Virus record (IMG/VR): IMGVR_UViG_3300033183_000491
Location: 62,001-126,000 of that record
Direction: 5' to 3' (one strand)
Length of the DNA stretch: 64,000 nt
The position numbers and the translations under genes were made by a program. How positions within the stretch are numbered: the stretch's first letter is position 1; each line of letters opens with the position of its first letter. Shown here piece after piece: positions 4,066 to 54,438 of the stretch. The notes under the pieces were generated by a model. It was given only the letters and a program-made list of their open reading frames with translations. It was not told the DNA's origin and did not search any database.

Positions 4066-4130
4066 ATTTTTTTAATAACCTTCCGTTTGTATTTGTAATA
4101 TTATAATAAGATTTTAAAGATTTTATTTAA

Positions 4131-4373
4131 TTACATCTTTTTTAATTCGTCAAGAGAAACAGATCCGATTTTTCTTGAGATTTCTTTTCCATCTTCTAGT
4201 ACTACAAATGTAGGAACATTCATAACTTGAAATTGTGTTGCTTTATCCATGTCAATTGATATATCAATTATCTTCATATTAAGTTCAGATTTGATTTCTT
4301 CATTTAACATTGATTTCATATGTCTACAAGGTCCACACCACGGTGAACTAAAAAATAGTATTTCTTTATTCAT
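4131..4373 (-). CDS. trxA: thioredoxin
   Basis: WCGPC active site, VPTF cis-Pro motif, adjacent to nrdB. Confidence 0.93.
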   Translation of the reverse strand: MNKEILFFSSPWCGPCRHMKSMLNEEIKSELNMKIIDISIDMDKATQFQVMNVPTFVVLEDGKEISRKIGSVSLDELKKM

Positions 4374-4385
4374 TGTTTTTCTTTC

Positions 4386-14006: not shown

Positions 14007-14032
14007 AAAAAAATACCAGCATTAGCTGGTAT
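14007..14032 (-). terminator. intrinsic terminator after ssb
   Basis: ATACCAGC-4nt-GCTGGTAT stem followed by a T run on the minus strand. Confidence 0.8.
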
Positions 14033-17199: not shown

Positions 17200-20100
17200 T
17201 TATTTTTTAATATCTTCCCATTCAACATATTTAAATTTTTCCAAGTAATCTGAATTGAGTTCGTCAGATCCCTCGTCAGATTTTTTGTTTTCATTACCAT
17301 ATCTGTCTTTAACTTGTTCAAGTAATATTTTAAAAGCTGTTTCTTTTTCAATAGACTTAACATTATAGATACCAGAATTAGCTCTAGAGTTTATGATTTC
17401 TCGAAGCCAAGTATCAGCAGTTGAAATAGTATCTTGATTACCCCAAACGTGTTTTGATGTTGGTTTGTATTTTTTTATACTTAAATTATTTTTAAATTTA
17501 ACACGGGAAGCAATGCCATCACTTGGATTTAAAGAAACAGTTTTATTTTCAAGTTTTTTTTCAAGTTTTTTAATACTTTCTGGATTTGCATATTTAAAAA
17601 TTTCATTAAGACTTACTTGAGAAGTATCTTCTCCTGATAAGAGATTGAAATCTTCGTATATTTGCGATTGATTAATTATATCAATATGAAATCCATTATA
17701 TTTTTTACCATTTGGTCTTAATGGGACTCCTCGTTCATCTAAAACAATCCTTCCTTTAAACTTTTTTGTGTTTTCATCGAGGCTTTTAATTGTATTAACA
17801 TTCTTCGTTGTTATTCCATATCTATGTGGTTTTGGATAAGCCATATAATCAATACCTGCACCTACATTGTTTGCGCCTAGATTAAAACATGTTTTTATAA
17901 AAAATTGTGTTATTTTAAAGTCATCGTCATCATTAGGATCATATAAACAAACATTTTTTTGTTCACCATCAATATTTCTAACTAAATATATATCAGCAGC
18001 ATATCCTAAAGCGTGGTTCATATCTCCGCCGTGTGATCTTTTTAGTATTTTTTTTAACATATTTTTTTTGTTTCTAATATTTCCTTGAAGAAAAAGACCA
18101 AACTCTTCTACGTTTTCTGTAAGACTTCCTAAATCTTCTGTATAAAATGTATAAAATGTTTTAGCTATTTTATACCATAAATTTATTGATAAAGAACCGC
18201 CACTAATAATTTTAACTTTTTCTAAAGAAGGATAAACTTCTTGCGTCAACTTAAAAGATTCATCTATTATCTTTAATAATTTAGGCTGAATGTTGCTTCT
18301 TCTTTCAGTCCAAGCATCATATTCAAAACCATATTCTATATTACTACTCCCCGTAGGATTTTGCTTTCCATTTGGGTTATCTTCGCTAATATTATTTAAC
18401 TTTATAAATTCATCTTGGTTTCCTCCACCCACGAGATTTATTTTGTCTATTATTTCTTCTTTTATTTTTTTTATTCTATCTTTGTAAACATATCCAGTGT
18501 TTTTTAAACTTGAAAGTTTTCGCTTATCCTTTTTAGACATATTGATGCTTTTTGAAGAAGTTTTATCATTTGAAATCTTTAAAACCTGTTCGCTTTTTCC
18601 TTTAAATAAATCTTCTTCGATAATTTCATCTTCTTCAAAAACTAAAGATGACGTTCTAATAATCGAAGAATCTTCTTCAGACTCAGTGTCAGATTCTTCG
18701 ATTAAAGACCTTCTATCATAAGAGTTTTTGTTATACTCTGATTTTAAATCATATAAAATTGATGAATAATAATCTTCTCTAAATTCAGGATAAAAATATA
18801 AATTAGGATCTCTCTTGGTAAGAGTATCTCCTAATTCTTTATAGTCGATAGATAAATATTTTTTACCATAAAGATTATGTAACAAAAAAATATTTTTTTG
18901 TTTAGAGAAAATATTTTTTTTAAAAATACATTTATCTATTATCATATTAACATTGATTGAATAAGTTTCATCAATCTTATAAAATAAATTAAAATCGCTA
19001 TCTCCTGGTTTTAAATTATAATACTTTGAAAATGGTTCTGGTGTTTTTGTAAATTTCTCTTTCTCTTTAGTAAGAAGATATTCTCCGTTTATTGTATTTA
19101 AATAAATATCTGGTTCGAACAAATGAAAATTTGAATATTCATCATCTGATATTACTTGATTATTTAAAAAAACGTTTTGATTTTTTGCTATCTTATCATC
19201 TAATATAGTATATTCAAAAACAAAATAAATTTTATTGTCTTCACTTGAAAAATAAATATCTTTTATAAAGTCTATACTAGACAAACCATCTAAAGTATAA
19301 CTGTCTAGTATAGACTTTATATCTTCATAAGACATAATACTACATTCGTTAGAAATTTCGAAAGAAGTGTTTGTTAATGTCGACTTTAAAATTTCATTAT
19401 CATTTTTGTATAACTCTATACCGACTGAAGATGTTATTGATTGTCTTAAATATGTATTATTTTTATTAGATGAAAAAACTGAAAAGAAAGCCAACGAATA
19501 TTTGTTAAAAAAGTCAACCCCAGCCTTATCAGTATTATTAATTGTAAAATCTTCTCTAAGTTTAGACAGTATTTTATTGTAATCATTAAATGTTAAAGAT
19601 TTTACAGAAAAACCTACAGTTCTAGAGAAATCATTTTTATCTTTATACACATCAGAAATATTTTTTATATAAGAATAATAAAAATCTTTATTGTTATAGT
19701 TATAGAACTTCGATGTAAAATCATCGTTTTCTCCTGTTTCCAAAACTATTTCTTCTAAAGACTCATATCCTTCCATTTGGTCAATTGTTTTTGAAAAATC
19801 TATTGTATCAAAGTCTTTTCCAAGAAATAAATCTTCTGTGTTATTTAATGTTATTTGAGCTTTAATACTTGGATCCATTTTAAAAACTATTTCTTTTTGC
19901 GGAATAAAAGAAGAATGTTTTAATAGATTTTTATTTGTACCTGATAATTCAAATGCAAAAGAAAAATTTTGATCTTCAACTTCGTTATTAAATATTACTC
20001 TTCCATACGTTTCATAGTTTTTAATATTATTAAGAACATATCTAAATTCATCAATAAAAGAATAATAAGATCTACTCTTAAATTTTTCAATAATCTCAAT

Positions 20101-30338: not shown

Positions 30339-30567
30339 TTAAAATTGTTTTTTAAATATATTTCTTGTGTTGTTTTGGCTTGGAGTACTTTGATTATTAT
30401 AATGATTTTGTTCTTGTTCTAATGTTTCTTTAAGTTTTCCTATAAACCAAGTTCTTTTCCATATTGGAAGGTTATAAGCATCTTTATAGCTGAAATTTAT
30501 GTGTTTCATAAGAACAAATAATTGTTCAAGAATGACGTCTTTGTTTTCAGGAGTCAGGCCAAAAAAA
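30339..30567 (-). CDS. tail assembly chaperone C-terminal segment (gp51/GT-like), probably reached by frameshift
   Basis: FFGLT...LEQLFVLMKH..FSY.DAYNLPIWKRTWF; overlaps the end of the upstream gene at a T7 run. Confidence 0.7.
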
Positions 30568-31386
30568 CGAGGCTCCGATTGGCAAATCAACCTCACTTTC
30601 TTCATGACAGTGTGAGCATAGCATATGAGATTTCATTTCAACTCCTGGTTCATGTTCGTCCAGGAATCTTCTAAGGGCAAGCGAATCTCTTGCAGGCATA
30701 TTTTGAACAAACAAACTAATTTTATTCTTATCAGAGATATTTTCAATTGAGAGAATAGAACGAGAAAGTCTATCTGTTACAGAACTCTCAACATTAAAGC
30801 CACTCTTTTTCTTTCTTTCATTGATGATCATCATTTCTCTTTCATCATGACCATTTAAGAATTTAACTTTTACGTTTTTCTTTGTGACAGGAAGTTGAAC
30901 TTCAAAAATGTTTTGTCCTATTTCAACAGGGTCAACTTGAAGTCTTTTAATAGGGAGACTTGAAAGATCAAAAGTTGATTTATTAGTCTTAGAACATTCT
31001 GGACATCCAATTTCTAGTGTGTAATCTGAGCCGTATCCTGTAATTCTAAGTGCAATAAGAAGAGCATTTCTATCACCTGAAATTAAATCGTCTGGGTCAA
31101 TAGATTTGTCAATTAAGCAGCTTTTAATAAGTTTTGAAATAACTGTTCCGTTTTTAATATAAGCTCTTGAAGTTAAAATATCTTCTTCTTTAGCTGTCAT
31201 TGGTTTGATTTCAAGAGTTTCTGTTCCAAGTAGGCTATCATTATTATAAATAACACCTCTTGATGGAAGAGGAACTGCTTCTGCTGCAATATCAATACCG
31301 AAGTCGTCAAGCATTACATTGCTTTTTTTAATAGGCCCACGATCATCAATATCAGATGGTTTAATTGGCTCATCTAATTTATTCAT
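30547..31386 (-). CDS. baseplate hub / tail assembly chaperone (T4 gp26-like)
   Basis: LPSRG..Y, MTAKEEDIL, GDRNALL..R...YG, CPEC and CSHC zinc pairs, FFWP end. Confidence 0.85.
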   Translation of the reverse strand: MNKLDEPIKPSDIDDRGPIKKSNVMLDDFGIDIAAEAVPLPSRGVIYNNDSLLGTETLEIKPMTAKEEDILTSRAYIKNGTVISKLIKSCLIDKSIDPDDLISGDRNALLIALRITGYGSDYTLEIGCPECSKTNKSTFDLSSLPIKRLQVDPVEIGQNIFEVQLPVTKKNVKVKFLNGHDEREMMIINERKKKSGFNVESSVTDRLSRSILSIENISDKNKISLFVQNMPARDSLALRRFLDEHEPGVEMKSHMLCSHCHEESEVDLPIGASFFWPDS

Positions 31387-31406: not shown

Positions 31407-34400
31407 CTATCTATTTACATTAATTATACCAATATTATTTTCATCTGTAAAATCATTTACGTTATTTATTAGATTATTAATTTGTATATTTTGGAAGAAA
31501 TCTTCATTTAAATTGTCTCCAAACAAAGAGAATCCAACATTACCTGAAATTGTATGTTCGAGATCTTCTAAGTTTGTTTTGTTTAAATTTGTAATAGGGA
31601 TATCAACAAAGTAATTTTTAATAATGCCTGATTGTCTGTAATTGTCAAAGAAATTTGTTAATTCAATAGAGAGTTGAGCTCTTGTATTTGCTAAAGGATT
31701 TGTCGACGAAGTCATATTAAATAGAACAGTATCATTATTAACAATAGGTTGAGTTATTAATAGATTCTTAAGATTTCTTTTTATATTTAAATAAATTCTG
31801 ACATTGTGAAACAGAGAAAATATATTTTTTCTTTGATTAATTAAAGTATTTGCTGAAAGTGGTTTTATTTTTTTATTAGCAGATAGAGTCCCGATAGGGT
31901 TAACAATATATTCTTTATTTTTTGTTTTTGTTAAGAGATTATCAAAATCATTATTTGAATAAATAAATTTAGAGTTTACAGGATTAGTAAATGTAATTAG
32001 ATTATTGTTATAATTTATACTATCGAGAGGCTGACTAATACTTTGACTTTGAGAAAGAGAATTTATAAATAACATAGAAGAAGGAACTTCTAGATTTAAA
32101 TCATCAACAACAGCTTCACATCTATTAAAAGTACTAATACTAAATCTAGAATTTAAGAATCTTAGTTTTTGCTGATCTAAACTAGTTTCAGTTCCATTAA
32201 TTAAACTAGATTTAACTTCATCTCTTTCATCTAATAAGTCAACTATATTTTTATCTAAATTATTAAAATAATATGTATCTTTAATTAAATTTTCATTCGA
32301 ATCGTACTCTAAAGTATCAAATACATATAAGAAATTTGAATCATCTCTTGATTTAACAACAATATCATCAACAATTTCAGGAGTATTAATACCTGGAATA
32401 TAGAAAACATCACATCTAAAATTATCATTATCTAATGCAATATCTTTAGCAACTTTATATGCATAAGTTGTTTGTCCTACAGTCTGATTAGGTATTTCAC
32501 CATCATATTCTCTTAAACAAGATTCATTAAGCATTTTTCTTTTATATTCATCAAGAATATTAATTCCATCAAACCCGCCATAAGAAAAGAAATCAAAACT
32601 TAAAAATCTCGAAGCAATTGCATCAGCTTCTGTTTCAGAATTAAGAACTTCATTAACATTAATATAATTAAAAGAATCAGGAATATGATCGATATCAGAC
32701 AAATCTTTTCCATCTCTTCTATAGAAAGAATATTGCCACTTATCATTTGTTGTTAATTCATTGGGAAGATATAAAATCTTTTCTAAATGAAAAAATCCAT
32801 TTTGACTATCACTATCAGTATCTTCTAAAGGTGTAATCCAAAACTTTTGATCTCTAAAGTCTTGAAAATATTTCGTATAACTGTGATAAAAATTATATTC
32901 ATCAGAAGAACTTTGCTGAAATGTGTCGAACATAAACTTATATGTATCGTTTTGCCCAACTAGAGAAACATCTTTAATTTCTCCTTTTAATGTTTTATCA
33001 AATTGAACTCCCCAATAACTATTGTCAATGTCATAATTTATTTTATTGTCACTAATTTCATTAATTTTTCTATTTGCGACATATAGTATCGGGTTCTGCA
33101 TTACAGAAACATCGTCTGTTACATCCAGATTACTCTCGTTTATGTTCAAATGAGGATATGGAAAAAATCCACATGGAATCAAAAAAGATTCATTCTGCAT
33201 ATATTCTACATCATCATGTATTTCAACATAAATGTGGTTATTTGTTTTTTTATAGTCACCAACATGAATAACTTCTTTTGTATTCAAATCATAGTATTCA
33301 TATTCTGTCCCAATAATCTTCCCTATATAATTTTCACTTTTAGGATTTAAATCTAAGTCTCTAAAAGACATTAAATTCATAAAAGAGTTATTTTTATAGT
33401 CGTATTTATATACAATTAAATCGAATATTGACCAAGATTCTCTTTGATCTCTTTTAAAAGATTTACCTAGTCTTCTTGGGATTATTCTAAATCTATATTT
33501 GTTTCCTTTTTTACCATCTGAATATGAATGGAATCTAAACAGTTTTTTACATTCATTATGAAAATTCTGTCTAAAACCTTCTTGTCTATATAAAGGTTGG
33601 GAAACGACCCAAGGTGTTTTTGCTTTTTTATAAATACTTTCAAACGATTCAAAATTAACTGTAGGATTGGAACCACTATCAATTTCTTCATTCCAATTAT
33701 TTATACCTACTGTAACAAAATGTCTACTATTATCAGCATCACTTTTAACTGTCTGATTAAATGAACTAATGTTTCTAAATGATGCGTAATTTAAATTTCC
33801 TTTTTCAAGATAATAATCTGGTGATGTATTAAAATAGCTTTCAAAATAATTCTTTTTTAAATATCGGTTTGTTTCATCAGGAAATTCTAAAATAACTTTG
33901 TTTTTATTAAGAACGCCTTGTAAATATATTTTTGGATTTTTTAATGAAGACTCAGTATTACCATATTCAATAGAGTTATTACTACTAACTGAAGATAGTT
34001 TGTTGTATAAATCTTCTTGTTTAAAAGTGTCAAGTTCATCTGATTGCAGTTTAAACTTTGTTCCTTTTGCTGCAAAAACAATGTCAGTAATTAAACCTAG
34101 TTTTGTAATTGAAGAATCACCTGTAATTTGCTCAATATAGTCTCTATAAGGAGAAACATATCCGTCTAAATCTATATTTTCATAATATGATCCGAAAAAA
34201 GTAGTTTTTCCTTTACTTCCACCAGAAACAGCAAAAGAATTATCACCTTTGATTCCAGATGTTATACTTCCTTTTAAAACGTCATCGCCAACAATAAAAC
34301 CAGCATGTTCATATTTGTTTTGAGAGTTTAAGCCGTTTCCATCACCAATACCAAGAACTCTTGTATAAGTTAATTGATTACCATTATTTGACAACCAGAT

Positions 34401-34646
34401 GTTTGAAGTTAAAGGACCATATTGATCTTTTTGATATTCAAAGTCACCAAATATGTTTTCCCACGTATTTAAAGTTGCTTCAGACTTTCCAAAAGACAAT
34501 ATTTGTTGTGGAACAAAAGCAGGACCCATATTAGCTGTACCAACAACTGAAAGTGTTTCTTCAGTTAATGATACTGTTACCTCTTCTTTAAAAGAGTTAG
34601 GTGTTACAATATGACCACTTATTTGTGAATTGTTGACATTTGACAT
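31407..34646 (-). CDS. divergent tail sheath paralogue 3
   Basis: VGTA..GPAFVP, TRVLG.G, AKTPW, FRFH...DG, GGFDGIN, NVR motifs shared with the other two sheaths. Confidence 0.8.
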   Translation of the reverse strand: MSNVNNSQISGHIVTPNSFKEEVTVSLTEETLSVVGTANMGPAFVPQQILSFGKSEATLNTWENIFGDFEYQKDQYGPLTSNIWLSNNGNQLTYTRVLGIGDGNGLNSQNKYEHAGFIVGDDVLKGSITSGIKGDNSFAVSGGSKGKTTFFGSYYENIDLDGYVSPYRDYIEQITGDSSITKLGLITDIVFAAKGTKFKLQSDELDTFKQEDLYNKLSSVSSNNSIEYGNTESSLKNPKIYLQGVLNKNKVILEFPDETNRYLKKNYFESYFNTSPDYYLEKGNLNYASFRNISSFNQTVKSDADNSRHFVTVGINNWNEEIDSGSNPTVNFESFESIYKKAKTPWVVSQPLYRQEGFRQNFHNECKKLFRFHSYSDGKKGNKYRFRIIPRRLGKSFKRDQRESWSIFDLIVYKYDYKNNSFMNLMSFRDLDLNPKSENYIGKIIGTEYEYYDLNTKEVIHVGDYKKTNNHIYVEIHDDVEYMQNESFLIPCGFFPYPHLNINESNLDVTDDVSVMQNPILYVANRKINEISDNKINYDIDNSYWGVQFDKTLKGEIKDVSLVGQNDTYKFMFDTFQQSSSDEYNFYHSYTKYFQDFRDQKFWITPLEDTDSDSQNGFFHLEKILYLPNELTTNDKWQYSFYRRDGKDLSDIDHIPDSFNYINVNEVLNSETEADAIASRFLSFDFFSYGGFDGINILDEYKRKMLNESCLREYDGEIPNQTVGQTTYAYKVAKDIALDNDNFRCDVFYIPGINTPEIVDDIVVKSRDDSNFLYVFDTLEYDSNENLIKDTYYFNNLDKNIVDLLDERDEVKSSLINGTETSLDQQKLRFLNSRFSISTFNRCEAVVDDLNLEVPSSMLFINSLSQSQSISQPLDSINYNNNLITFTNPVNSKFIYSNNDFDNLLTKTKNKEYIVNPIGTLSANKKIKPLSANTLINQRKNIFSLFHNVRIYLNIKRNLKNLLITQPIVNNDTVLFNMTSSTNPLANTRAQLSIELTNFFDNYRQSGIIKNYFVDIPITNLNKTNLEDLEHTISGNVGFSLFGDNLNEDFFQNIQINNLINNVNDFTDENNIGIINVNR

Positions 34647-34709
34647 TTAACATCCTGTTTTTAACTTTATTATATAACTATTAATGTAGGTTAAAAAACA
34701 GGATGTTAA
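34647..34709 (-). promoter_or_regulatory. ~19-bp inverted repeat covering the sheath-3 RBS, with an AT motif in the loop
   Basis: TTAACATCCTGTTTTTAAC (34647-34665) / GTTAAAAAACAGGATGTTAA (34690-34709). Confidence 0.75.
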
Positions 34710-34725
34710 TATTTAATGATTTAAA

Positions 34726-35214
34726 TTAGTATTGAAGTACGCAGTTATCAAATCTGATTGTTAAAGAAATGTCTGCTGGTGCTTCATCATCATATGAAAG
34801 ATCACTAAAGTTTGCATTAGTTAAGAAAGCTCCTTTAATATCCCAAAGTTCAACAACTGTTCCAACAGGATCAAGCATCTTAAGTTGACAATCTCTTTTA
34901 TAGAAATCTGCATAACCAGCTCTACCACTAACAGATTCATAGTGTGTACGAATCCATTCCATAACTTGTTGCGCTCCACTTGGCGCAATAGGATCGTGAA
35001 GAGTAACATTCATTTGTTCGAATGTCATCTTACCTGCAACATATCTTTTTGCATTGATAAAGTTAATTTCTTGCTCACCAATTGAAAATGAAGGTCGACT
35101 AGCAGACTTAAGGATAAAGGCATCAATACCCTCAATTGCGAAGACCCATCTGTTCTTTCTTTTTGGCTCAAACTTATTCGGAATCATTTCCGTGACTGAA
35201 AGCGTCTCTGCCAT
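34726..35214 (-). CDS. tail tube protein (gp19-like)
   Basis: FEPKR.NRW, RP, DPIAPS..Q.VMEW, YKRD..L..LDP.G..VE.W...GAF. Confidence 0.92.
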   Translation of the reverse strand: MAETLSVTEMIPNKFEPKRKNRWVFAIEGIDAFILKSASRPSFSIGEQEINFINAKRYVAGKMTFEQMNVTLHDPIAPSGAQQVMEWIRTHYESVSGRAGYADFYKRDCQLKMLDPVGTVVELWDIKGAFLTNANFSDLSYDDEAPADISLTIRFDNCVLQY

Positions 35215-35249
35215 TTTATTATCTCCTAAAATTCTTTATATTATATATA

Positions 35250-38200
35250 TTAGTCTATTGAATTAGTTACAACGAAATCAAGTGAAATAAACTCTACAGA
35301 TTTGGTAGGTTGCAAATAAACTTTACCACGAATTGTATTGTTTTCAATATCATTTTGAGTTGTTGTTGATGTATCAATTTGAACTTTATAACGTTCTACA
35401 CCTTGACGTGCCTGAACTTCTGACATGATCGGCTCAACGAGTGAACTAAATCTATTAAGAGTTGAAGCTCTATTCGGCTCGAATAAGAGTGTATTAGCAA
35501 CTGCCTTAACTCTACGACGAATGTTAATCAAAAGTCTACGAACATTAATTCGATCAAGAGCTGATTGATTTTGTAACAAAGTCTTTTGTCCAAATGCATA
35601 AACCTCGTTTGTACGTCCTGATGGAACATAAATTGGATTAATGTCTGCATCATAAAGATCATTTAACAAATCTCGATTCATTTGAACCTTTGCATTACTT
35701 GCATTTAAACGTCCACGAGTTAAACCAGCTGGAGCAAACCAAGGATCAGCTAATGTATCATTTTGACTCATAACACCAAGTATACATACTGACGGAGGAA
35801 CCTGAATTGGTGTGTTATTTGACGATCTTCTTGAAATAACATCTGGGAAATATGCAGCTGCAAAAGATGTATCCAATCCACGATTTTCAAATGTTGTAAT
35901 TGTTTGACCAACGTGAGGCTTAATATCTGATGATGTAATAACTGCAGAATTCTTATCAGATTCTTGAATATCCATAACCAACATTGCATCAAATCTGCTT
36001 TCGCAAGCTGTAATTGCATAATCTGTTACTAAAGGTTCACGAATACCAGGAATTGCTAACAACTGAATCTCTGTTGCACTCTTATCTGAAAGAACGTCAA
36101 TTGCTCTCTTGTAAGATTCAACAGTTGGGCCAGTAAACTTGTTTGATCCTACCACTTCCTCGTTAGCTTCACGATGAGCAGCAACTGTACTTAAAGCAGC
36201 TTTTTCCTTGTTAAAGATATTAAGACCATCAAATCCACCTTGCATTAAACAACGGAACTTAAGAAACTTAACATTACCACCCTTAGCTGCAGTTGAAATG
36301 TCAAATGCAGAAAGATTAGAATTGTCACTCGAACCAGATCTTTCATAAACAGCTGATGCCCAATCTGACCCATCCCAGAAAATATTCTCAAGAGAGAAAG
36401 ATTCACTAGACAATTTAGAGAAAGAATAAGTTCCCATATCAGGATAAAATTTTGTCCAAGATCTAATACTTGGATTAAGTCTAATCTCACCTAACTCTTT
36501 ATGAAGACCACCATTTTCTTTCTTTGCAAATTTAACGCCCCACGCCAAATCAGAAGATGGTGATACAGATACACCAGATTGTCTCGTTAATGTCTTTACG
36601 AAAGGTAAAGGTAAAACCTCAAGATTCTCAAGAGTGTTTACTAGAAGTAAACGTGATTCACCTGATCCATTTGTTCCTGATTCATCAAATAATCCTGTAT
36701 AACCTGTGTTAAGTGTTACATACTCTGAGAATCCACAAGGAAGAGTCACATAATCCAAGTCACCAGACATAAGCTCTTCAGACATTTCAACCCAAACATA
36801 TTTGTTTCGAAGTTCAAAATCTCCATCTTCAACGAGCTTTCCTTTCTTGAAATCATAATAAACATTCTTGTTACCAATAACTCTACCAATAAAGTTTCTA
36901 TGGTCTGGGTCAAGTGTTAAATTCTTCCAAGACACAATAGACTCACCCTTGACAGGATCACTATCAAAACTCTCTAATGATAAACTAAATGTTGCCCACT
37001 CAGACGCTGTTGAACCTAGTCTTAAATCTGAAATAAGGATTCTAAATCTATCGTTTGCTATTGCACCATCATCTTGTGCATGTAGTCTAAATAGTTTCTT
37101 TGTTTGTCCACCAAACTTTTGAGACATAATCCAAGGAGATTTTGCTGTTCTGAATCTTGTGTCAAAGCCTTCAAAATTAGGACTGTCAGCTGTTTCAGTA
37201 TTTCTTGATCCTTGTGACGGTAAACAGAAAGCAGCAGTTTCTGAACTAGCTGCGGTATTTGTAGACGTATATACACCTGTTACATCAATTACTGAAACGT
37301 CTGGATCAACGTCCCAATGAGCATATAAATAATGTCCACATTCTTCAATCTTTTCTGGGTCTGTGTTTAAAACTTTAGCAAAGTAATTAACACTTTCAGG
37401 ATCAAATGAACAAGTTAAAACTGCTGGATGATCAGTGTTACTAAACCCATTTAATAAAACTGTAAAAGAATTATTATCTACTTTACCTAATTCGTAACCA
37501 ATTAAATCAGAAGCCTCAGTGCCACCAAAGTTTCTTAAAGTACCTTCGCTAGTTACAGATTTTCTTGCATCTGCATCTGTAGTAGAGACAGATGTGTATG
37601 TTCCATCTGTAACGTCTAATGTAGCTTTAACTCCTTGAGGAGTCATAAGTAGACCTCGAATTACAGGAATAGCTGATCCACTTCCTCCAGTTAAGTTTAA
37701 TTGTTGAATTCCAAAACTACTATCAATCCTTGTTCCATTAAATGAAGCCTTTATTGGAGAACCTTTTATTTTTAAAATAATACTATCACTAAAGAAATTA
37801 CCAACATCTGAATTAGTCTTTGCTTCAAGACTAAGATACATTAGATAAATATTACTTTCATCCTGAACTGCGTCGCTTATGATACCAAATGGTCTAATAT
37901 TTTGATCAGTTTGACTATTTCCAATAGTATCTCTTAAAACATCTTGAATTCTATTAACTGTTTCAACTTGATTTGTATTGTCGATTTCAATTTGATAATA
38001 TCCACTTACTAGAGTACCATTAACTGTTCCATCTGTATACTCAACAAATTTGTATCTTACTGTAGTATCTGTTGCAGTATTAAGAGATTTAAAATCAAAA
38101 GAAAATTCATTCCCGATTAAAGTATCACTAATATCAAATTCCAAGAAAAAAGTACTATTTTCAGTAATATTAGACCCAGTAGTATCAACTGTTGAGGATG

Positions 38201-39623
38201 TATTATCAATATCACTTACATTAACAAAGTTTGTAATCGCGCCTTTTAAAGAACTTGTAATAGTTAATGTTCCATTATTATTATTTACAAATGTATACGT
38301 AGGATCTCCTTGACCATCTAATTGGTTTGCTTCAGCAGCAGCTCGTCCAAAAGTAATAGCTTCAGCTATTCTTCCCGCTATATTTGTATTATTACCTAAT
38401 TGGTTTGAAATACCAATAACAACATTTCCTTGAGTATTGTCTCTAGCAGCTGCTGAATCTTGTGTTGTATCAATTCTAATTGTTAAATCATTTCCTAAAA
38501 TATCTGTTATAACAATAGTATCATCATTTAATGGGTTGCCAGAAATTGTAAGAGTAACAATTTCTGCAACTGCAGGTGTGTCGTAAATAGGACCAAGTGC
38601 AAGCTGAGTTTCTAAATCTGTTCCACTTGAAGAACTATTCCCTAATGATGAAAGGGTAATCGACCCTTCTGTATCTGTATTTAAGAAATATTTAACACTT
38701 GTATTTGTAGATTCTCCTGTTCCAACGTGACTAATTTCAATAAAGTTACTAACTAAATCTTTTGTAATAACATTTAAATAGTTTGATGATAAAATTTTAC
38801 TTGAGGGAAAAGCTATTCCTAATTCGCTTTGTCCACTAAATGCTTTTTCTAATTGACTTAAAAATCCGTCAATATCTAAACCATTAATACCGACGGATAT
38901 CTCATGTGGATCTGACTCTGTCCCAGCAGAATCAGTCAAATCTTCAGGGGTGATAGTTGATGATCCTGTTAAGAAAATAAATTTAAGCCATTTAATATCA
39001 CTTTCACCTACAGCTTTAATTAAAATAAAATCATCGTTTGAAGGTAACTCATCTCCAAGAGTAATTTTTAATCTAGAAGAAACATTCGAACTTTGAAGTC
39101 CTGCATCTTTTAAGAATTCACTTCCAGCAGCATCTTTCATGAAACATCCTAAGAAGTGTGTTCTTCCGACATCTTTTGCAGCAGTTTTTGAAGCTGCAGC
39201 ATTAGGTCCTGATTCATAAGCTGCATGTTGATTATCTGTTAAATCTGTTCCATCGTATGAAACTGAGTCACCAACGATAAAACCAGCACCTTGTGTTTTT
39301 TTATTTGAATCTAATGTACCGTCGCCATCACCAACGCCAAGAACTCGAACGTAAGCTCCAGCTTGAGCATTTCTCATCCATTCATTAATAGCAAGAGGAC
39401 CAAAGAGATTGGCGTTGCTATCTTGGCTAACTTCTGAAAGAGATCCGAAAATGTCTCCGAATTGTTGTGTATTTGCGAATGTTTTTGGTACGAAAGCAGG
39501 GCCACGTTTAGCAGGCCCTACAACTGCAGCAGGAACACCTTGAGGTAGAACTTCTTGGTCCCTAACTTGTGATAAATCTATTTCTCTTAGAGTAACTCTT
39601 GCTGAGCCTTGATTATCGGCCAT
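35250..39623 (-). CDS. tail sheath protein 2 with a large internal insertion
   Basis: EIDLS, GPAFVP, PWFAPAG..RG, INPI, FGQKTL, SALDRINVRRL, LFEPN, PTKSVEFI. Confidence 0.93.
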   Translation of the reverse strand: MADNQGSARVTLREIDLSQVRDQEVLPQGVPAAVVGPAKRGPAFVPKTFANTQQFGDIFGSLSEVSQDSNANLFGPLAINEWMRNAQAGAYVRVLGVGDGDGTLDSNKKTQGAGFIVGDSVSYDGTDLTDNQHAAYESGPNAAASKTAAKDVGRTHFLGCFMKDAAGSEFLKDAGLQSSNVSSRLKITLGDELPSNDDFILIKAVGESDIKWLKFIFLTGSSTITPEDLTDSAGTESDPHEISVGINGLDIDGFLSQLEKAFSGQSELGIAFPSSKILSSNYLNVITKDLVSNFIEISHVGTGESTNTSVKYFLNTDTEGSITLSSLGNSSSSGTDLETQLALGPIYDTPAVAEIVTLTISGNPLNDDTIVITDILGNDLTIRIDTTQDSAAARDNTQGNVVIGISNQLGNNTNIAGRIAEAITFGRAAAEANQLDGQGDPTYTFVNNNNGTLTITSSLKGAITNFVNVSDIDNTSSTVDTTGSNITENSTFFLEFDISDTLIGNEFSFDFKSLNTATDTTVRYKFVEYTDGTVNGTLVSGYYQIEIDNTNQVETVNRIQDVLRDTIGNSQTDQNIRPFGIISDAVQDESNIYLMYLSLEAKTNSDVGNFFSDSIILKIKGSPIKASFNGTRIDSSFGIQQLNLTGGSGSAIPVIRGLLMTPQGVKATLDVTDGTYTSVSTTDADARKSVTSEGTLRNFGGTEASDLIGYELGKVDNNSFTVLLNGFSNTDHPAVLTCSFDPESVNYFAKVLNTDPEKIEECGHYLYAHWDVDPDVSVIDVTGVYTSTNTAASSETAAFCLPSQGSRNTETADSPNFEGFDTRFRTAKSPWIMSQKFGGQTKKLFRLHAQDDGAIANDRFRILISDLRLGSTASEWATFSLSLESFDSDPVKGESIVSWKNLTLDPDHRNFIGRVIGNKNVYYDFKKGKLVEDGDFELRNKYVWVEMSEELMSGDLDYVTLPCGFSEYVTLNTGYTGLFDESGTNGSGESRLLLVNTLENLEVLPLPFVKTLTRQSGVSVSPSSDLAWGVKFAKKENGGLHKELGEIRLNPSIRSWTKFYPDMGTYSFSKLSSESFSLENIFWDGSDWASAVYERSGSSDNSNLSAFDISTAAKGGNVKFLKFRCLMQGGFDGLNIFNKEKAALSTVAAHREANEEVVGSNKFTGPTVESYKRAIDVLSDKSATEIQLLAIPGIREPLVTDYAITACESRFDAMLVMDIQESDKNSAVITSSDIKPHVGQTITTFENRGLDTSFAAAYFPDVISRRSSNNTPIQVPPSVCILGVMSQNDTLADPWFAPAGLTRGRLNASNAKVQMNRDLLNDLYDADINPIYVPSGRTNEVYAFGQKTLLQNQSALDRINVRRLLINIRRRVKAVANTLLFEPNRASTLNRFSSLVEPIMSEVQARQGVERYKVQIDTSTTTQNDIENNTIRGKVYLQPTKSVEFISLDFVVTNSID

Positions 39624-39665
39624 ATCTATAGTCTCCTGTTATTCTTTAAATCTTTATATTATATA

Positions 39666-42600
39666 TTAGGGAAATTCAACACCTGCGTTTGTAATAACAA
39701 AATCAATTGCAATAAATTCAACAGCACGTGTTGGGACGATAACAATTTTACCATTTAATCGATTATTGTCAACATCTTCAGATGTATTATTTGTATCATC
39801 CATGATAACCCTGAAGTCTTCAATCCCTTGATTAACTTGAATTGAAGATAATTGTGAATTTGAGCTTTGAACGAACCTTGCTCTCGTTTCACTGTTATTT
39901 TGTTCGAATAAAAGCCCTTGAGCAATTAATTCGATTCTTCTCTTAACTTCTAGGACCAAACGACGTACGTTAACGCGATCAAGAGCTGTTCTTGCTAGTT
40001 GTGAAGTCTTTTGTCCAAAGATAACAAATTGTTTGTTCGGGAAGTTTGCAATAGGATTAATACGTGCTTCGTAAAGAGTATCACGATCTTCTGCATTTAA
40101 TCTAACATCGATTGCCTGAATTGTTTCGAGTGTTCCTCTTGTAAATCCTGCAGGAGCAAACCAAGGTTGTGCAACATCATCAGTCTTAGCTAATGCACCA
40201 AGAGCAATAATTGATGGTGGAACCTTAATCATTCTTCTACTTGCTAAAGCTGCTGTTTCATCATCGCTAAAGTCTAAGATCTTAACGTCAGGGAAATAAG
40301 ATGCTGTATAAGATGAATTAACTTCTCTACGATCAAATGCTCCAGCTGTTTCATCAACATCAGGTCTACTTGAAGAAAGTCCTTTTTCATTCACAAAGAC
40401 TCTAAATCCATCTGTATCGAATTGTTGGATGTCCATTAGGTAAAGAGATTTTCCAAATTCTTCGCTCTTTAATTTAACTCTATCAGTAATGAATGGATCT
40501 CTAATTCCTGGAAGAAGAAGAACATTATGATTAACAACCATTTCGTCAGTCATTAAATTAACAGCATTCATGTAAGATGCAACAACATTGTTTTCATCTT
40601 CAGCACCTTGCATAGCAGCAGCTGTTGTAAGCGCAAGACCACTGTCAAATCCAGATGAACTTGCTTTACCTTGATCAGCTAAATCAGAACCTGCTCCTTT
40701 TTGTGTCAATTCAATCGATGCAGCGCGATCTGTCATGTAATATGAGTCGCTGTCTAAGATATTAAGTCCATCAAATCCACCAAAGAAAGGAGCTGTAAAC
40801 TTAGCTGCAACGCTATACTTATTAAACTTAGTTACATCCTCTGCTAAAAGTTTTGCTAATGACATTCTAACAGATTGAACTTCAACTGATGTATCTTCAC
40901 CTGAAAGAGCGTCTTTTGAATCTGTAACTGTGAAATTAATTGTATGATTAGAAGAATCATATAGTTTTGATCCAACATCTGCATTTCTTATATAAACAGC
41001 ATCTTTAAATAGTTCTGAAACTGAACCCTTGAGAGCATCAACTCTAAGGTCAGCAGAACTTCCATCGTCTGCAAGAGGAGTTTTAAAACAAACTTTTGCT
41101 AAACTGAATTTGTTATTGTTATGAGAATCTGCCTTTGATCTTGACCAAACATCAGTATCTGCACTTAAAAACTTTGTATAATTCTCTAGGAGTTGATTAA
41201 ACTCTGTACTGTGATTAGGATTATCAATGTCTTTAATTCTTGTTGACATTAAACCCCAGTGAAGACTTAAATCAACAGATTCAGAAGGTGATGCTTCACC
41301 TGTAAACGTTTGATTATATGAAAGACCTCCTGTTTTAATACTTCCTTTTGTAATCTTAAATCTACTTGGTAAAGGAGGCATAACAGATTTATTTAGATTT
41401 GATGCTGGGTTACTATCTGTAAATGTAGTCCAAAGTGCTGTCGAAGAGTCTTTACCCTCTGCGTTTAATAAAAGAGCAGGAACTCCACGATAACCGAATG
41501 GAAGAGCTTTTTGTGGAGCTTCTCCATTTAAGACATCATCACTTACAACAACTCTAACTCTTGTTGAATTATTAGAGAATGATCCTTCACGAATTAATCT
41601 TCTTTCAGATTCTTGTGCTTCAAAATTATAATAAATCTTTTGATCACCAATAACATTACCAATAAATGATTCTGAATTGGGATCTAATGAACAATTTGTA
41701 AATGTTTCATAAACAATTTGAGCTTCATCTGTATCTCTTAAATCTCTTACCGAAACTGTGAATGTTCCATATTCGCTTGTTGGATCATTACTTGCTCTTA
41801 GATTCGAAATAGAAATCTTATATTTATTACTTGCATATGCACCATCATCTAATGATTCAAAGTGGAATAAATCGTATTCTTTATCACCAAAAGGTTGAGA
41901 GATAAACATTGGCGTTTCTGGAGTTGTAAACTTATTTTCAAAGTTAGCATACTTACTTAAATAATTTACTCCGCTAACATCATCATTTCCTCTTAAGAGA
42001 GCAACAGCTTGTCCGACGTTTGAAGCAACTTCTACATCAACAGGAAAATGTGCATATAATAAGACTTTATGTTCATCAAAAGCTAAAGGATCTGTATTTA
42101 AAACTTTTGAGATATAGCTTGAACTAGATGGATCTAATGAAATGTCTCTAGTATAAATTGAACCTGCATCGTTTCTAATATCTAAAGTAAATAATCCAGA
42201 TGTTTCATCAGAAGTTTCGACGTCAGCGTTTGTTCCTACTTTTAAGTGAACATCTTTATGAACAAAAATCATTGCTCTAACTAATTCGACAATACCATCT
42301 CCAGCATTACCTAAACCATCTGTTAAATCATTGTCCATGTCTGTTGTATGAGAATTATTGTCGTTAAAGTTACCTAAAGCAAGATGTTCTGCGTTATCTA
42401 ATTTATGCTTTGCAGCAAGAAAAAAGACGCTGCCTTTTCCTGATGCATCGTCTGAACTAAGTTTGAATCCTGCATTGACTGAAGGTGATCCTATAGAGTA
42501 TCCACTTCCAAGAGTTCTACAAAAAGTAAGAGCTTTACCGTTGTTTCTAAAAAATTCTGTTGCTGCGTGTCCGCCAAGCATGCGTCTGTCAGGTGCTCCG

Positions 42601-42773
42601 AAGATTCGAGTGTATTCTTCAATTGATGAAACAGTAGTTGGTACAAATGCTGGACCTCTTTCAGAAGGACCAATAACACCGACAGGTGTTGCTGTGTTTC
42701 TAAAAATAGGTCTACTGATTATTTCAATTTCACGCTCAAAAAAACCTGGAGACTTAAATGTCTGCTCTGCCAT
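39666..42773 (-). CDS. tail sheath protein 1
   Basis: SPGFFEREI, GPAFVP, PWFAPAG, INPI, GQKT, ALDRVNVRRL, PTRAVEFI. Confidence 0.94.
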   Translation of the reverse strand: MAEQTFKSPGFFEREIEIISRPIFRNTATPVGVIGPSERGPAFVPTTVSSIEEYTRIFGAPDRRMLGGHAATEFFRNNGKALTFCRTLGSGYSIGSPSVNAGFKLSSDDASGKGSVFFLAAKHKLDNAEHLALGNFNDNNSHTTDMDNDLTDGLGNAGDGIVELVRAMIFVHKDVHLKVGTNADVETSDETSGLFTLDIRNDAGSIYTRDISLDPSSSSYISKVLNTDPLAFDEHKVLLYAHFPVDVEVASNVGQAVALLRGNDDVSGVNYLSKYANFENKFTTPETPMFISQPFGDKEYDLFHFESLDDGAYASNKYKISISNLRASNDPTSEYGTFTVSVRDLRDTDEAQIVYETFTNCSLDPNSESFIGNVIGDQKIYYNFEAQESERRLIREGSFSNNSTRVRVVVSDDVLNGEAPQKALPFGYRGVPALLLNAEGKDSSTALWTTFTDSNPASNLNKSVMPPLPSRFKITKGSIKTGGLSYNQTFTGEASPSESVDLSLHWGLMSTRIKDIDNPNHSTEFNQLLENYTKFLSADTDVWSRSKADSHNNNKFSLAKVCFKTPLADDGSSADLRVDALKGSVSELFKDAVYIRNADVGSKLYDSSNHTINFTVTDSKDALSGEDTSVEVQSVRMSLAKLLAEDVTKFNKYSVAAKFTAPFFGGFDGLNILDSDSYYMTDRAASIELTQKGAGSDLADQGKASSSGFDSGLALTTAAAMQGAEDENNVVASYMNAVNLMTDEMVVNHNVLLLPGIRDPFITDRVKLKSEEFGKSLYLMDIQQFDTDGFRVFVNEKGLSSSRPDVDETAGAFDRREVNSSYTASYFPDVKILDFSDDETAALASRRMIKVPPSIIALGALAKTDDVAQPWFAPAGFTRGTLETIQAIDVRLNAEDRDTLYEARINPIANFPNKQFVIFGQKTSQLARTALDRVNVRRLVLEVKRRIELIAQGLLFEQNNSETRARFVQSSNSQLSSIQVNQGIEDFRVIMDDTNNTSEDVDNNRLNGKIVIVPTRAVEFIAIDFVITNAGVEFP

Positions 42774-42828
42774 ACTAGTTCTCCTAATATCTAAATTATT
42801 TATCTATTCTAATTATACATTAAATATT

Positions 42829-52962: not shown

Positions 52963-54360
52963 TTAACTCAGTAACCATATATTACTCCCGCATCCCCAAA
53001 CTTTATATAGATTCATTTCAAAAGCTTTTTCTCTTTCGCATTTATTAAGATCTGACTTAACAATAAATCTATCATACCTTTGTCTCCCGTCAGTATACCA
53101 ATAATCGATACCTGTTTCGCCATAATATTTAAAGCCTACTTTTTCATATCCTAATCCTTCACCAAATCTTCGATCTGCATAAGTCATCAAAGGATATTCA
53201 TAGTTTTCTTTAAATCTTTTTAAAAGTTTTCCTAATCCACCAACAACAACAGTATTTAGTTTAGAAGCAAACCTGCTTATTTCATAATAACCTTTCCATT
53301 TCTTTTGTCTAGGTTTTCTAAATCCAATAGCTGATATTAATTCTTCTTTATAAAACAATCCAAGTCTAATACTACTATTAACAGATCCACTAATATGACT
53401 CTTATTCATAAAAAGATCAAACTCTTTTTTACCAATTTCTTTAACAACACATTTTCTTGCCCATATCTTATTACAAAGTCCAAGTCTATTATTAATCATA
53501 CTTTTGCAGATCTCTCTTTTATATTCCCATTCATCAGAGAATATATGCATTAACTTCATCCCTAAAGACTTACATTCTTTTGTTTTCCAAATCATATCTT
53601 CTTTGTTTGTCGAATCAACAACTTCAGAGTGCCAATATAAACCATTATATTCAATTCCAAAATTCTTCTGTTTTAATGAAATGTCGATTTCTTTAGGTTT
53701 AATCAAATTTCTATCTCCATTAATAACAGAATCAAATCCTAAACTTTTTACATATTCATATATTTCTATCTCAGCTGCGCTTTTATTTATTGGATAACAC
53801 TTAGGACATAATGATCCTCTTTCAAATGATTGCAAAGTTTTCTTACAAATAAAATTACATTTTTTACATTTAAATTCTAAATACTGATGTTGTCTACTGA
53901 AATATTCTTCGACAGGTGTTAATATTTCAAATTCTTCATTTCTATCTAAGATTCTTTGTAAAACTTCGTAGCTTCCTAATTGTTTAGTCATGCTAATTCT
54001 ATTTTTAGTTTTTGATGTATGTTTCTTTCCCCAGAAAGGATTATCTTTACCTGACAAGCCTTTTATTCTATCATCGTCTAATTTTGTTTTTCCTTTATTC
54101 CAAGACTCAGACTTACCGCCTTTTTTCCCGCCTTCTTTCATTGCAAGTTTTCCACAATCTTTACAATATTTTTTAAAAGAAAACGCTACATACCTAGTCT
54201 CTTTTCCACAATTAAAGCATCCCTTGTAATCTTTGCAAATATATTCTCTTGTGTATTCTTTACTACTTAATTTATGTTCACTTCTCAAGTGATTACTAAA
54301 TTTTTTTCCTTCACCCTCAAAATCACATAAATAACATTTCATATCATTATACCTTTTCAT
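52963..54360 (-). mobile_element. Hef-like (Vsr/PD-(D/E)XK) homing endonuclease with Zn fingers and NUMOD3 repeats
   Basis: CxxC pairs, SWNKG, NPFWGKKHT, S.AE.EI, EIDI.....IEYNGLYWH, FSDEW, ARKC, YADRR...G..Y...GF. Confidence 0.82.
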
Positions 54361-54414: not shown

Positions 54415-54438
54415 AAAAAAACCAGCAAAAGCTGGTTT
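54415..54438 (-). terminator. intrinsic terminator after the major capsid gene
   Basis: AAACCAGC-4nt-GCTGGTTT plus T run; same core stem as at 14013-14032. Confidence 0.82.

What the first reader, a model, noticed from the sequence alone, without database searches (positions are those of the whole stretch)
34647..34709. Hairpin that hides the sheath-3 RBS, with a promoter-like motif in its loop
Seen: a ~19-bp inverted repeat with one bulge. The gene-proximal arm contains the CAGGA RBS and abuts the ATG at 34646. The 24-nt loop holds ATAGTTATA, a variant of the motif found before structural genes. Established: T4 e, soc and I-TevI use this logic, where long transcripts fold over the RBS and transcripts starting inside the hairpin do not. 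Inference: abundant tube read-through mRNA is silenced for sheath 3, keeping it low-copy.
Basis: partly seen in the sequence, partly recalled or inferred. Interest (0 to 1): 0.66.

Follow-up and report, generated by a model that had tools for sequence, protein, structure and literature searches.

The report
Hairpin hiding sheath-3 ribosome site
A conserved RNA hairpin between the tail-tube gene and a third sheath-like gene of an uncultured marine jumbo phage buries that gene's ribosome-binding site, the same trick phage T4 uses, but it is unproven that a promoter in the loop bypasses it.

Summary
On the minus strand, a 19-bp stem with one bulge (arms 34709-34690 and 34665-34647) and a 24-nt loop fills the tube/sheath-3 spacer. 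Its 3' arm carries the AGGA Shine-Dalgarno and ends at the ATG (34646). It folds far better than shuffles (z -4.8).

Twenty-six distinct relatives from marine viromes all keep a hairpin over the SD, and often over the AUG, with different arm sequences. The evidence for selection is:
- 87% of aligned cells are paired, against 38-52% when partners are slid.
- 8 of 18 pairs show compensatory double changes.
- There are many G-U pairs, and the mRNA-sense strand folds better than the antisense in 20 of 26.

So the structure is selected in the mRNA. Opening the initiation region costs about 20 kcal/mol on a read-through transcript and about 4 on a transcript starting at -18.

The promoter-in-loop idea is plausible but unproven:
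- The loop carries the exact TATATAAT found upstream of tube and sheath-2.
- A loop block (AATAG.TAT) is invariant while the arms vary.
- The phage encodes a sigma-70-family factor.
- Objective motif tests, however, do not beat AT-rich shuffles, and no RNA data were obtainable.

Sister clades carry a canonical terminator plus promoter at the same junction. This is a new member of the T4 e/soc/49/I-TevI kind. "Low copy" is untested.

The parts
34726..35214 (-). Tail tube gene (162 aa, T4 gp19-like). Its stop codon lies 16 nt upstream of the hairpin.
   Evidence: phrog_4542 2e-28; PF06841 2.9e-5. About 600 relatives in IMG/VR.
34690..34709 (-). 5' arm of the hairpin (anti-SD strand; contains UCCU opposite AGGA; one bulged U).
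   Evidence: Co-varies with the 3' arm in relatives.
34666..34689 (-). 24-nt A/T-rich loop.
34674..34682 (-). Loop block AATAGTTAT. Invariant as AATAG.TAT in 8 distinct relatives whose arms differ.
   Evidence: alignment A3.
34669..34676 (-). TATATAAT, a -10-like element 3 nt before the 3' arm. A start about 7 nt downstream (around 34664-34660) would fall inside the 3' arm. This start site is inferred.
   Evidence: There is no -35 partner.
34647..34665 (-). 3' arm of the hairpin. It carries the Shine-Dalgarno and the spacer and ends at the ATG.
   Evidence: P(paired) of the SD region is 1.00.
34653..34656 (-). Shine-Dalgarno AGGA of sheath-3, 6 nt before the ATG.
   Evidence: AGGA->AGGG and GGAA variants are matched by UCCU->CCCU and UUCC changes in the 5' arm of relatives.
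34644..34646 (-). Start codon of sheath-3.
   Evidence: The N-terminus is conserved in relatives (A1).
31407..34646 (-). Sheath-3: a 1079-aa divergent tail-sheath paralogue. The last ~200 aa have no detectable sheath C-terminal domain.
   Evidence: BLASTP 4e-41 and 8e-14 to the two sheath genes. No Pfam or PHROG hit. hhalign of the C-terminus is negative.
35234..35247 (-). TATATAATATAAAG, a promoter-like motif directly upstream of tube.
   Evidence: 2 matches against 0.07 expected. The spacer is highly conserved in relatives.
39652..39665 (-). The same 14-mer directly upstream of sheath-2.

Best explanation
The spacer between the tube gene and the third sheath-like gene encodes an mRNA hairpin.

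On any transcript that enters from upstream (from the tube, sheath-2 or sheath-1 promoters), the 5' arm pairs with the Shine-Dalgarno, the spacer and, in many relatives, the AUG of sheath-3. Ribosomes then cannot initiate there, although RNA polymerase can continue into the downstream baseplate genes.

Sheath-3 is translated mainly from transcripts that begin inside the hairpin, just downstream of the -10-like TATATAAT at the 3' edge of the loop. Such transcripts lack the 5' arm and have an open initiation region. Sheath-3 dosage is thereby set by its own weak promoter and is uncoupled from the heavy transcription of sheath and tube.

Shown here (computationally and comparatively): the structure, its selection in the mRNA sense, and occlusion of the initiation region.

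Inferred: the internal start site, and the dosage purpose.
For: Structure:
- z -4.83; perfect 16+3 bp arms.

Conservation:
- All 26 distinct tube->sheath-3 spacers fold with z -3.5 to -11.
- Mean P(SD paired) is 0.94.

Covariation on a structure-blind MAFFT alignment:
- 87% of cells are paired, against 38-52% when partners are slid.
- 8 of 18 pairs show double changes.
- Covariation score is 0.256 against 0.05-0.08 slid; 0 of 500 shuffles reach it.

RNA sense:
- 75 G-U pairs out of 662.
- The sense strand is more stable than the antisense in 20 of 26, by a mean of 5.7 kcal/mol.

Energetics:
- Opening -14..+6 costs 20.2 kcal/mol on the long form and 4.3 on a transcript starting at -18. The means over 26 are 17.8 and 3.6.

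Wider clades:
- Three more divergent clades also occlude the SD with unrelated stems: L059/L061, L033/L050/L054 and L056.
- Other clades place a canonical terminator plus TATATATAATTAGA plus a free RBS at the same junction. Uncoupling sheath-3 from tube is therefore the conserved logic, and sheath-3 has its own promoter elsewhere.

Read-through:
- No intrinsic terminator lies at the site.
- The next convincing intergenic terminator on this strand is at 14032-14013.

Promoter:
- The same TATATAAT sits upstream of tube and sheath-2.
- It is biased 15 sense to 4 antisense in upstream regions.
- The loop block is invariant while the arms vary.
- The phage encodes a sigma-70-family factor with regions 1.2, 2 and 3.

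Precedent: T4 e, soc, 49 and I-TevI (PMC3014915).
Against: - There is no transcript data.
- Similarity of the loop to the conserved tube-upstream consensus is not better than shuffles.
- A generic -10 pattern is found in 6 of 26 loops against 5.5 expected.
- ATAG.TAT is rare upstream of other genes.
- There is no -35 element.
- In several relatives the best -10-like element overlaps the 3' strand of the stem or lies very close to the SD, so a start site would leave a very short leader.
- The upstream promoters look like the same class, so T4-style temporal gating would not apply.
- At least one other SD-occluding hairpin in this genome (gene at G000 167075) has its promoter-like element upstream of the whole hairpin. 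A different opening mechanism therefore exists or is needed there.
Confidence: 0.5

Rival explanations
1. Translational coupling. The hairpin keeps sheath-3 closed unless a ribosome finishing the tube gene sits on the stop codon and melts the base of the stem. Sheath-3 is then made as a fixed small fraction of tube from the same polycistronic mRNA, and no internal promoter is needed.
For: In 23 of 26 relatives the stem starts 0-10 nt after the tube stop codon (0 nt in 10 of them). The bases melted first are those paired with the AUG and the spacer. Some opening mechanism is needed, because the closed form costs about 18-20 kcal/mol.
Against: In the window the stem starts 16 nt after the stop, and in L089/L091 23 nt after it. 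That is beyond the reach of a terminating ribosome (established footprint, from general knowledge). The 5' arm lies wholly outside the tube reading frame, so elongating ribosomes never cross it. The SD itself sits mid-stem and would stay paired. Coupling does not explain the invariant loop block.
Confidence: 0.17
2. Processing or stability element. The long duplex is an RNase III-type site or a 3' exonuclease barrier. It defines and stabilises the 3' end of the abundant tube mRNA. Cleavage either destroys or, alternatively, frees the sheath-3 initiation region.
For: Stems of 19-29 pairs are long enough for RNase III (general knowledge). Every related lineage has some structured element right after tube, usually a terminator, so marking the end of tube mRNA is a conserved need.
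Against: A barrier or cleavage site has no need to include the SD and AUG. Yet all 26 relatives, and three further clades with unrelated stems, place the SD in the 3' arm. The compensatory changes track SD variants.
Confidence: 0.15
3. A transcription terminator or attenuator that happens to overlap the RBS.
For: Sister clades have a canonical terminator at this position.
Against: There is no U-tract after the stem, and the stem is A/U-rich with a 24-nt loop. The scan finds no terminator here. The same genome uses classical G/C stem plus U-run terminators (14032-14013 and about 54437-54415). No promoter-like spacer follows to restart the downstream genes.
Confidence: 0.05
4. A DNA-level palindrome (an operator for a dimeric regulator, or a cruciform) or an antisense RNA structure.
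For: Two or three other SD-containing palindromes in this genome lie between divergent genes and could act as DNA sites.
Against: There are 75 G-U pairs. The sense strand folds better than the antisense by a mean of 5.7 kcal/mol, in 20 of 26. Symmetry at the DNA level is therefore not what is conserved. The arms are not a repeated family in the genome.
Confidence: 0.03

Closest known systems
Phage T4 genes e (lysozyme), soc, 49 and I-TevI: an RBS-sequestering hairpin with a late promoter between the 5' strand and the RBS (review PMC3014915)
   Same: The SD and/or AUG are paired with an upstream strand on long transcripts. A -10-only promoter-like element sits inside the structure, so transcripts starting there would lack the 5' strand. 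The element lies in a phage with T4-type head and tail genes.
   Different: Internal initiation is not demonstrated here. The phage has no gp55, gp45 or gp44 homologue, and the motif is TATATAAT rather than TATAAATA. The upstream genes are themselves late structural genes with the same motif, so the role would be dosage insulation rather than early/late timing.
Terminator plus promoter module at the same tube/sheath-3 junction in sister clades (loci L012, L026-L032, L036)
   Same: Same genomic position. The same outcome is expected: sheath-3 expression is uncoupled from tube transcription.
   Different: Those use a G/C stem plus U-run, then TATATATAATTAGA and an unpaired RBS. The window clade has no U-run and buries the RBS instead, so polymerase can read on.
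Translational coupling through RBS-masking structure, e.g. RNA phage MS2 coat/replicase (general knowledge, not checked here)
   Same: The downstream cistron is closed by long-range or local pairing. The stem is close to the upstream stop codon in most relatives.
   Different: The masking strand is not inside the upstream reading frame. In the window it starts 16 nt past the stop codon.
Intercistronic stabiliser hairpins and RNase III sites of polycistronic mRNAs, e.g. T7 RNase III sites (general knowledge, not checked here)
   Same: A long duplex immediately after a very highly expressed gene.
   Different: Those do not need to contain the next gene's SD. Here inclusion of the SD is the conserved feature.

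Membership tests
T4-type RBS-sequestering hairpin with internal promoter | The SD and/or AUG of the regulated gene are base-paired in a stable helix on transcripts from upstream. | tested here: met
   P(SD paired) is 1.00 in the window and 0.94 on average in 26 relatives. The opening cost is 20 kcal/mol. Covariation supports the helix.
T4-type RBS-sequestering hairpin with internal promoter | A promoter lies between the 5' strand and the RBS, so that its transcripts lack the 5' strand. | tested here: inconclusive
   For: an exact TATATAAT in the loop, shared with tube and sheath-2 upstream, and an invariant loop block. Against: motif tests do not beat shuffles and there is no -35. No RNA data.
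T4-type RBS-sequestering hairpin with internal promoter | Upstream transcription reads through into the structure. | tested here: inconclusive
   There is no intrinsic-terminator-like site between tube and sheath-3, and promoter-like motifs lie upstream of tube and sheath-2. This rests on sequence only.
T4-type RBS-sequestering hairpin with internal promoter | Long transcripts are poorly translated and short ones well translated. | not testable with these tools
   Needs reporters or toeprinting.
T4-type RBS-sequestering hairpin with internal promoter | A gp55-dependent late promoter (TATAAATA). | tested here: not met
   No gp55, gp45 or gp44 homologue by tblastn at E<1. The phage instead has a sigma-70-family gene.
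Intrinsic (rho-independent) terminator | A short G/C-rich stem followed by a U-run. | tested here: not met
   No site is reported at 34647-34709. The tail after the stem is AUGUCAAAUG.
Any curated Rfam family | A score at or above the gathering threshold. | tested here: not met
   Best hits score 20-22 bits against thresholds of 52-140 bits.
Phage tail sheath (for the regulated gene) | Homology to sheath N-terminal and central regions. | tested here: met
   BLASTP 4e-41 (residues 266-873) and 2e-15 (residues 33-157) to the 1457-aa sheath.
Phage tail sheath (for the regulated gene) | The sheath C-terminal domain (PF17482). | tested here: not met
   No Pfam hit at E<=1 on the last 299 aa. hhalign of a 6-sequence profile against the sheath-1 C-terminus gives probability 1%. 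The profile is shallow, so divergence beyond detection is possible.

The most novel reading that the evidence does not exclude
The hairpin is a 'translational insulator' that replaces a terminator. It lets polymerase from the strong sheath and tube promoters run on to feed about 20 kb of downstream baseplate and fibre genes, while one gene in the middle (sheath-3) is excluded from that flux and dosed only from its own promoter inside the loop. This would be dosage control among co-timed late genes rather than temporal control. It appears to have been reinvented with unrelated stems in at least four clades of uncultured Far-T4-like marine phages.
Probability: 0.35. Interest if true: 0.6.

Novelty: new member of a known kind. 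Interest (0 to 1): 0.45.

Why it matters
- It gives a clean, covariation-backed example of cis-acting translational control in an abundant but uncultured marine phage lineage, where almost nothing is known about gene regulation.
- It marks the third sheath paralogue as a protein whose dose is specially controlled, which is a clue to its structural role.
- The same junction is solved by terminator plus promoter in sister clades and by RBS burial here. That makes a natural experiment on how phages set the stoichiometry of tail parts.

Tried and rejected
- T4 late machinery: tblastn with T4 gp55, gp45, gp44, gp62, RegA, gp46, gp47 and RpbA found nothing at E<1. There was no RNAP beta match. The PF00940 search was uninformative because its controls also failed.
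- PWM refinement of the promoter motif drifted into the Shine-Dalgarno and was abandoned.
- Canonical sigma-70 -35/-10 scans gave fewer or no more hits than shuffles.
- Match of the spacers to the tube-upstream consensus averaged 4.9 mismatches against 5.5 for shuffles, which is not significant.
- A generic -10 regex in the loops gave 6 observed against 5.5 expected.
- The pattern ATAGWTAWAWAAT has 2 exact hits against 0.27 expected. It was designed post hoc, and with 1 mismatch it gives 8 against 7.9.
- Codon adaptation and GC3 as an expression proxy were not informative. Even the capsid gene ranks low.
- Rfam found nothing.
- A repeated or mobile-element origin of the arms is rejected, because the arm 12-mers occur only here.
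- A direct search with whole sheath-3 in IMG/VR found nothing. An N-terminal alignment was needed.
- The GenBank phage collection holds no close relative of sheath-3.

Full report
**Setting**

The window is bases 62001-126000 of a single 239,550-bp virus record with terminal repeats, 29% G+C. Nearly all genes in the window are on the minus strand.

The finding lies in a tail module. On the minus strand the order is:
- sheath-1 (39666-42773, 1035 aa);
- sheath-2 (35250-39623, 1457 aa);
- a gp19-type tube (34726-35214);
- a 79-nt spacer;
- a 1079-aa ORF (31407-34646);
- a T4-type baseplate hub (30547-31386).

The 1079-aa ORF has no Pfam or PHROG hit, even in pieces. It is nevertheless clearly a sheath paralogue: BLASTP gives 4e-41 and 2e-15 to sheath-2 and 8e-14 to sheath-1. 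Its last ~200 residues do not detectably match the sheath C-terminal domain.

The capsid protein is a distant gp23 relative. Its closest matches are uncultured huge phages and Rhodothermus phage RM378, the cultured reference of the uncultivated 'Far-T4' group (PMC4360716). I treat that placement as tentative.

**The observation**

Read on the minus strand, the 5' arm is 34709-34690, the loop is 34689-34666 (24 nt) and the 3' arm is 34665-34647. The ATG follows at 34646.
- The arms are 16 nt of perfect complement plus three more pairs after a single bulged base.
- The 3' arm contains CAGGA and ends at the ATG.
- The loop contains ATAGTTATA and, overlapping it, TATATAAT.
- The fold is far better than chance: -21.1 against -9.2 +/- 2.5 kcal/mol, z -4.83, with 0 of 200 shuffles as good.

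**Is the hairpin selected?**

The tube protein has about 600 relatives in IMG/VR. I combined an alignment of sheath-3 N-termini, the IMG/VR scans and one metagenome scan. This gave 26 distinct tube->sheath-3 spacers whose sheath-3 N-termini are 53-68% identical to the window's.

Folding:
- Every one folds into a hairpin whose 3' arm holds the SD.
- z ranges from -3.5 to -11, and mean P(SD paired) is 0.94.
- In most the AUG is paired too.

Arm sequences differ, including at the SD. AGGA, AGGG and GGAA variants are matched by UCCU, CCCU and UUCC in the 5' arm.

On a MAFFT alignment made without reference to structure:
- An 18-pair helix has 87% of cells paired, against 38-52% when partners are slid by 1-3 columns.
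- 8 pairs show changes on both sides.
- The covariation score is 0.256 against 0.05-0.08, and 0 of 500 shuffles reach the observed values.

The relatives carry 75 G-U pairs among 662. The mRNA-sense strand folds better than its complement in 20 of 26, by a mean of 5.7 kcal/mol. What is conserved is therefore an RNA structure in the mRNA, not a DNA palindrome or an antisense RNA.

More divergent clades, with sheath-3 about 30% identical, also bury the SD, using unrelated stems:
- a 20-bp stem in L059/L061;
- a 9-bp stem in L033/L050/L054;
- a 7-bp stem in L056.

**What the structure does to translation**

The computed cost of opening positions -14 to +6 is 20.2 kcal/mol on a transcript entering from the tube gene. 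It is 4.3 kcal/mol on a transcript starting at -18. The means over 26 relatives are 17.8 and 3.6.

By the established relation between initiation-region stability and expression (general knowledge), the long form should be essentially silent. Sheath-3 is conserved, so something must open it.

**Is it a terminator?**

No.
- There is no U-run after the stem, and the stem is A/U-rich with a large loop.
- The terminator scan reports nothing at the site.
- The same genome uses textbook terminators elsewhere: 14032-14013, and about 54437-54415 after the capsid gene.
- No convincing intergenic terminator lies on this strand between those two.

Polymerase that passes the tube gene should therefore run on through the baseplate genes.

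Other clades of the family put a canonical terminator immediately after tube. Where sheath-3 is present they follow it with TATATATAATTAGA and an unpaired RBS. Many relatives lack sheath-3 altogether and go from tube through a terminator to the hub.

The conserved logic at this junction is thus 'do not let tube-level expression spill into the next gene'. Sheath-3 demonstrably has its own promoter-like element in sister clades. In the window clade the hairpin fills the whole spacer, so any sheath-3 promoter must lie inside it.

**The promoter-in-loop claim**

In favour:
- The loop ends with TATATAAT. This is the same 8-mer that lies directly upstream of tube and sheath-2 as TATATAATATAAAG, which has 2 matches against 0.07 expected.
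- It sits at comparable distance from the ATG.
- Genome-wide this 8-mer is the most strand-biased word in upstream regions, 15 sense against 4 antisense. 17 of its 75 copies lie within 60 nt upstream of an ORF, and one immediately precedes a tRNA-like sequence, which was not checked with a tRNA tool.
- A start about 7 nt downstream would fall in the first bases of the 3' arm.
- In an 8-sequence subclade whose arms differ, the only invariant block apart from the start codon is AATAG.TAT in the loop. This points to sequence-specific recognition.
- The phage encodes a sigma-70-family protein with regions 1.2, 2 and 3. It has no gp55, gp45 or gp44 homologue.

Against:
- In this A/T-rich sequence the objective tests fail. 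The best ungapped match to the conserved tube-upstream consensus averages 4.9 mismatches against 5.5 for shuffles.
- A generic -10 pattern is present in 6 of 26 loops against 5.5 expected.
- ATAG.TAT is rare upstream of other genes.
- There is no -35 element.

RNA reads could not be obtained. I therefore rate internal initiation at about even odds.

**Rivals**

1. *Coupling.* In 23 of 26 relatives the stem begins 0-10 nt after the tube stop codon, so a terminating ribosome could melt the pairs that hold the AUG. In the window the distance is 16 nt, and in L089/L091 it is 23 nt. The masking strand is never inside the tube frame.
2. *RNase III site or 3'-end stabiliser.* This cannot be excluded. 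It does not explain why the SD is always inside the stem.
3. *Terminator.* Disfavoured, as above.
4. *DNA palindrome.* Disfavoured by the G-U and strand asymmetry.

**Genome-wide context**

SD-occluding hairpins are enriched at gene starts in this genome, with 5 observed against 0.4 expected at a strict cut-off. The class is mixed, though:
- Two or three are palindromes between divergent genes whose RBS and start sequences mirror each other.
- One, the gene at G000 167075, has a promoter-like AATAGGTATAAT upstream of the entire hairpin.

The sheath-3 case is the only one between two co-oriented structural genes.

**Comparison and verdict**

The arrangement works like the T4 e/soc/49/I-TevI initiation regions (PMC3014915).

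As a member of that kind:
- RBS sequestration is met.
- The internal promoter is inconclusive.
- gp55-type promoter identity is not met.
- Differential translation is untestable here.

The upstream genes carry the same promoter-like motif. If the model holds, the role would therefore be dosage insulation among late genes rather than early/late timing.

That sheath-3 is 'low-copy' is an inference without data. Codon usage was uninformative.

I file the finding as a new member of a known kind, well supported as a regulatory RNA structure and of moderate interest.

Noticed in passing
window 31407-32020 (C-terminal ~200 aa of sheath-3): The third sheath paralogue aligns to sheath-2 only up to residue ~873. 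Its C-terminus has no detectable sheath C-terminal domain (no Pfam hit; hhalign probability 1%). It may be a non-polymerising or specialised sheath-like protein.
   Followed up: partly
loci L025, L035, L040-L080: Many relatives go tube -> terminator -> baseplate hub with no sheath-3. The third sheath gene is therefore an accessory insertion present in only part of the lineage.
   Followed up: partly
window 35215-35249 and relatives: The 35-nt sheath-2/tube spacer is almost invariant across relatives (TAATATATAGATATATAAAGAATTTTAGGAGA...). It is far more conserved than the neighbouring coding sequence.
   Followed up: partly
window 42774-42828 and loci L125-L204: Upstream of sheath-1 there are two direct copies of ATAATTAGA (ATAAATAGA in relatives) about 20 nt apart. 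They are conserved over many relatives. The second copy, (C/T)ATAATTAGA, matches the promoter-like element that follows the terminator in front of sheath-3 in sister clades.
   Followed up: partly
G000:C1:52553-52622 and 184130-184203 and ~18435-18520 (outside the window): Spacers between divergent genes are near-perfect palindromes in which both genes share mirrored RBS and start sequences (e.g. AAAAAAGGATTATTATG on both strands). The purpose is unknown.
   Followed up: no
G000:C1:166990-167080 (outside the window): A 17-bp perfect hairpin buries the GGAGA SD of a 126-aa gene that also starts TTAAATGTCA. A promoter-like AATAGGTATAAT lies upstream of the whole hairpin, so its own transcript would be closed.
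   Followed up: no
G000:C1:25962-26711, minus strand (outside the window): A phage-encoded sigma-70-family factor (regions 1.2, 2 and 3; no region 4 detected). No T4 gp55, gp45 or gp44 homologue and no RNA polymerase beta subunit were found.
   Followed up: partly
window 52963-54360: A homing/HNH endonuclease gene (phrog_3339, 6e-77) sits directly after the major capsid gene and its terminator.
   Followed up: no
window 14013-14032 and ~54415-54437, minus strand: Two textbook intrinsic terminators (ACCAGC...GCTGGT plus 7 U) bracket about 40 kb of co-oriented structural genes.
   Followed up: partly
window 4066-4385, minus strand: An unlisted small ORF in this 320-nt gap encodes a thioredoxin-like protein (WCGPC motif).
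   Followed up: no
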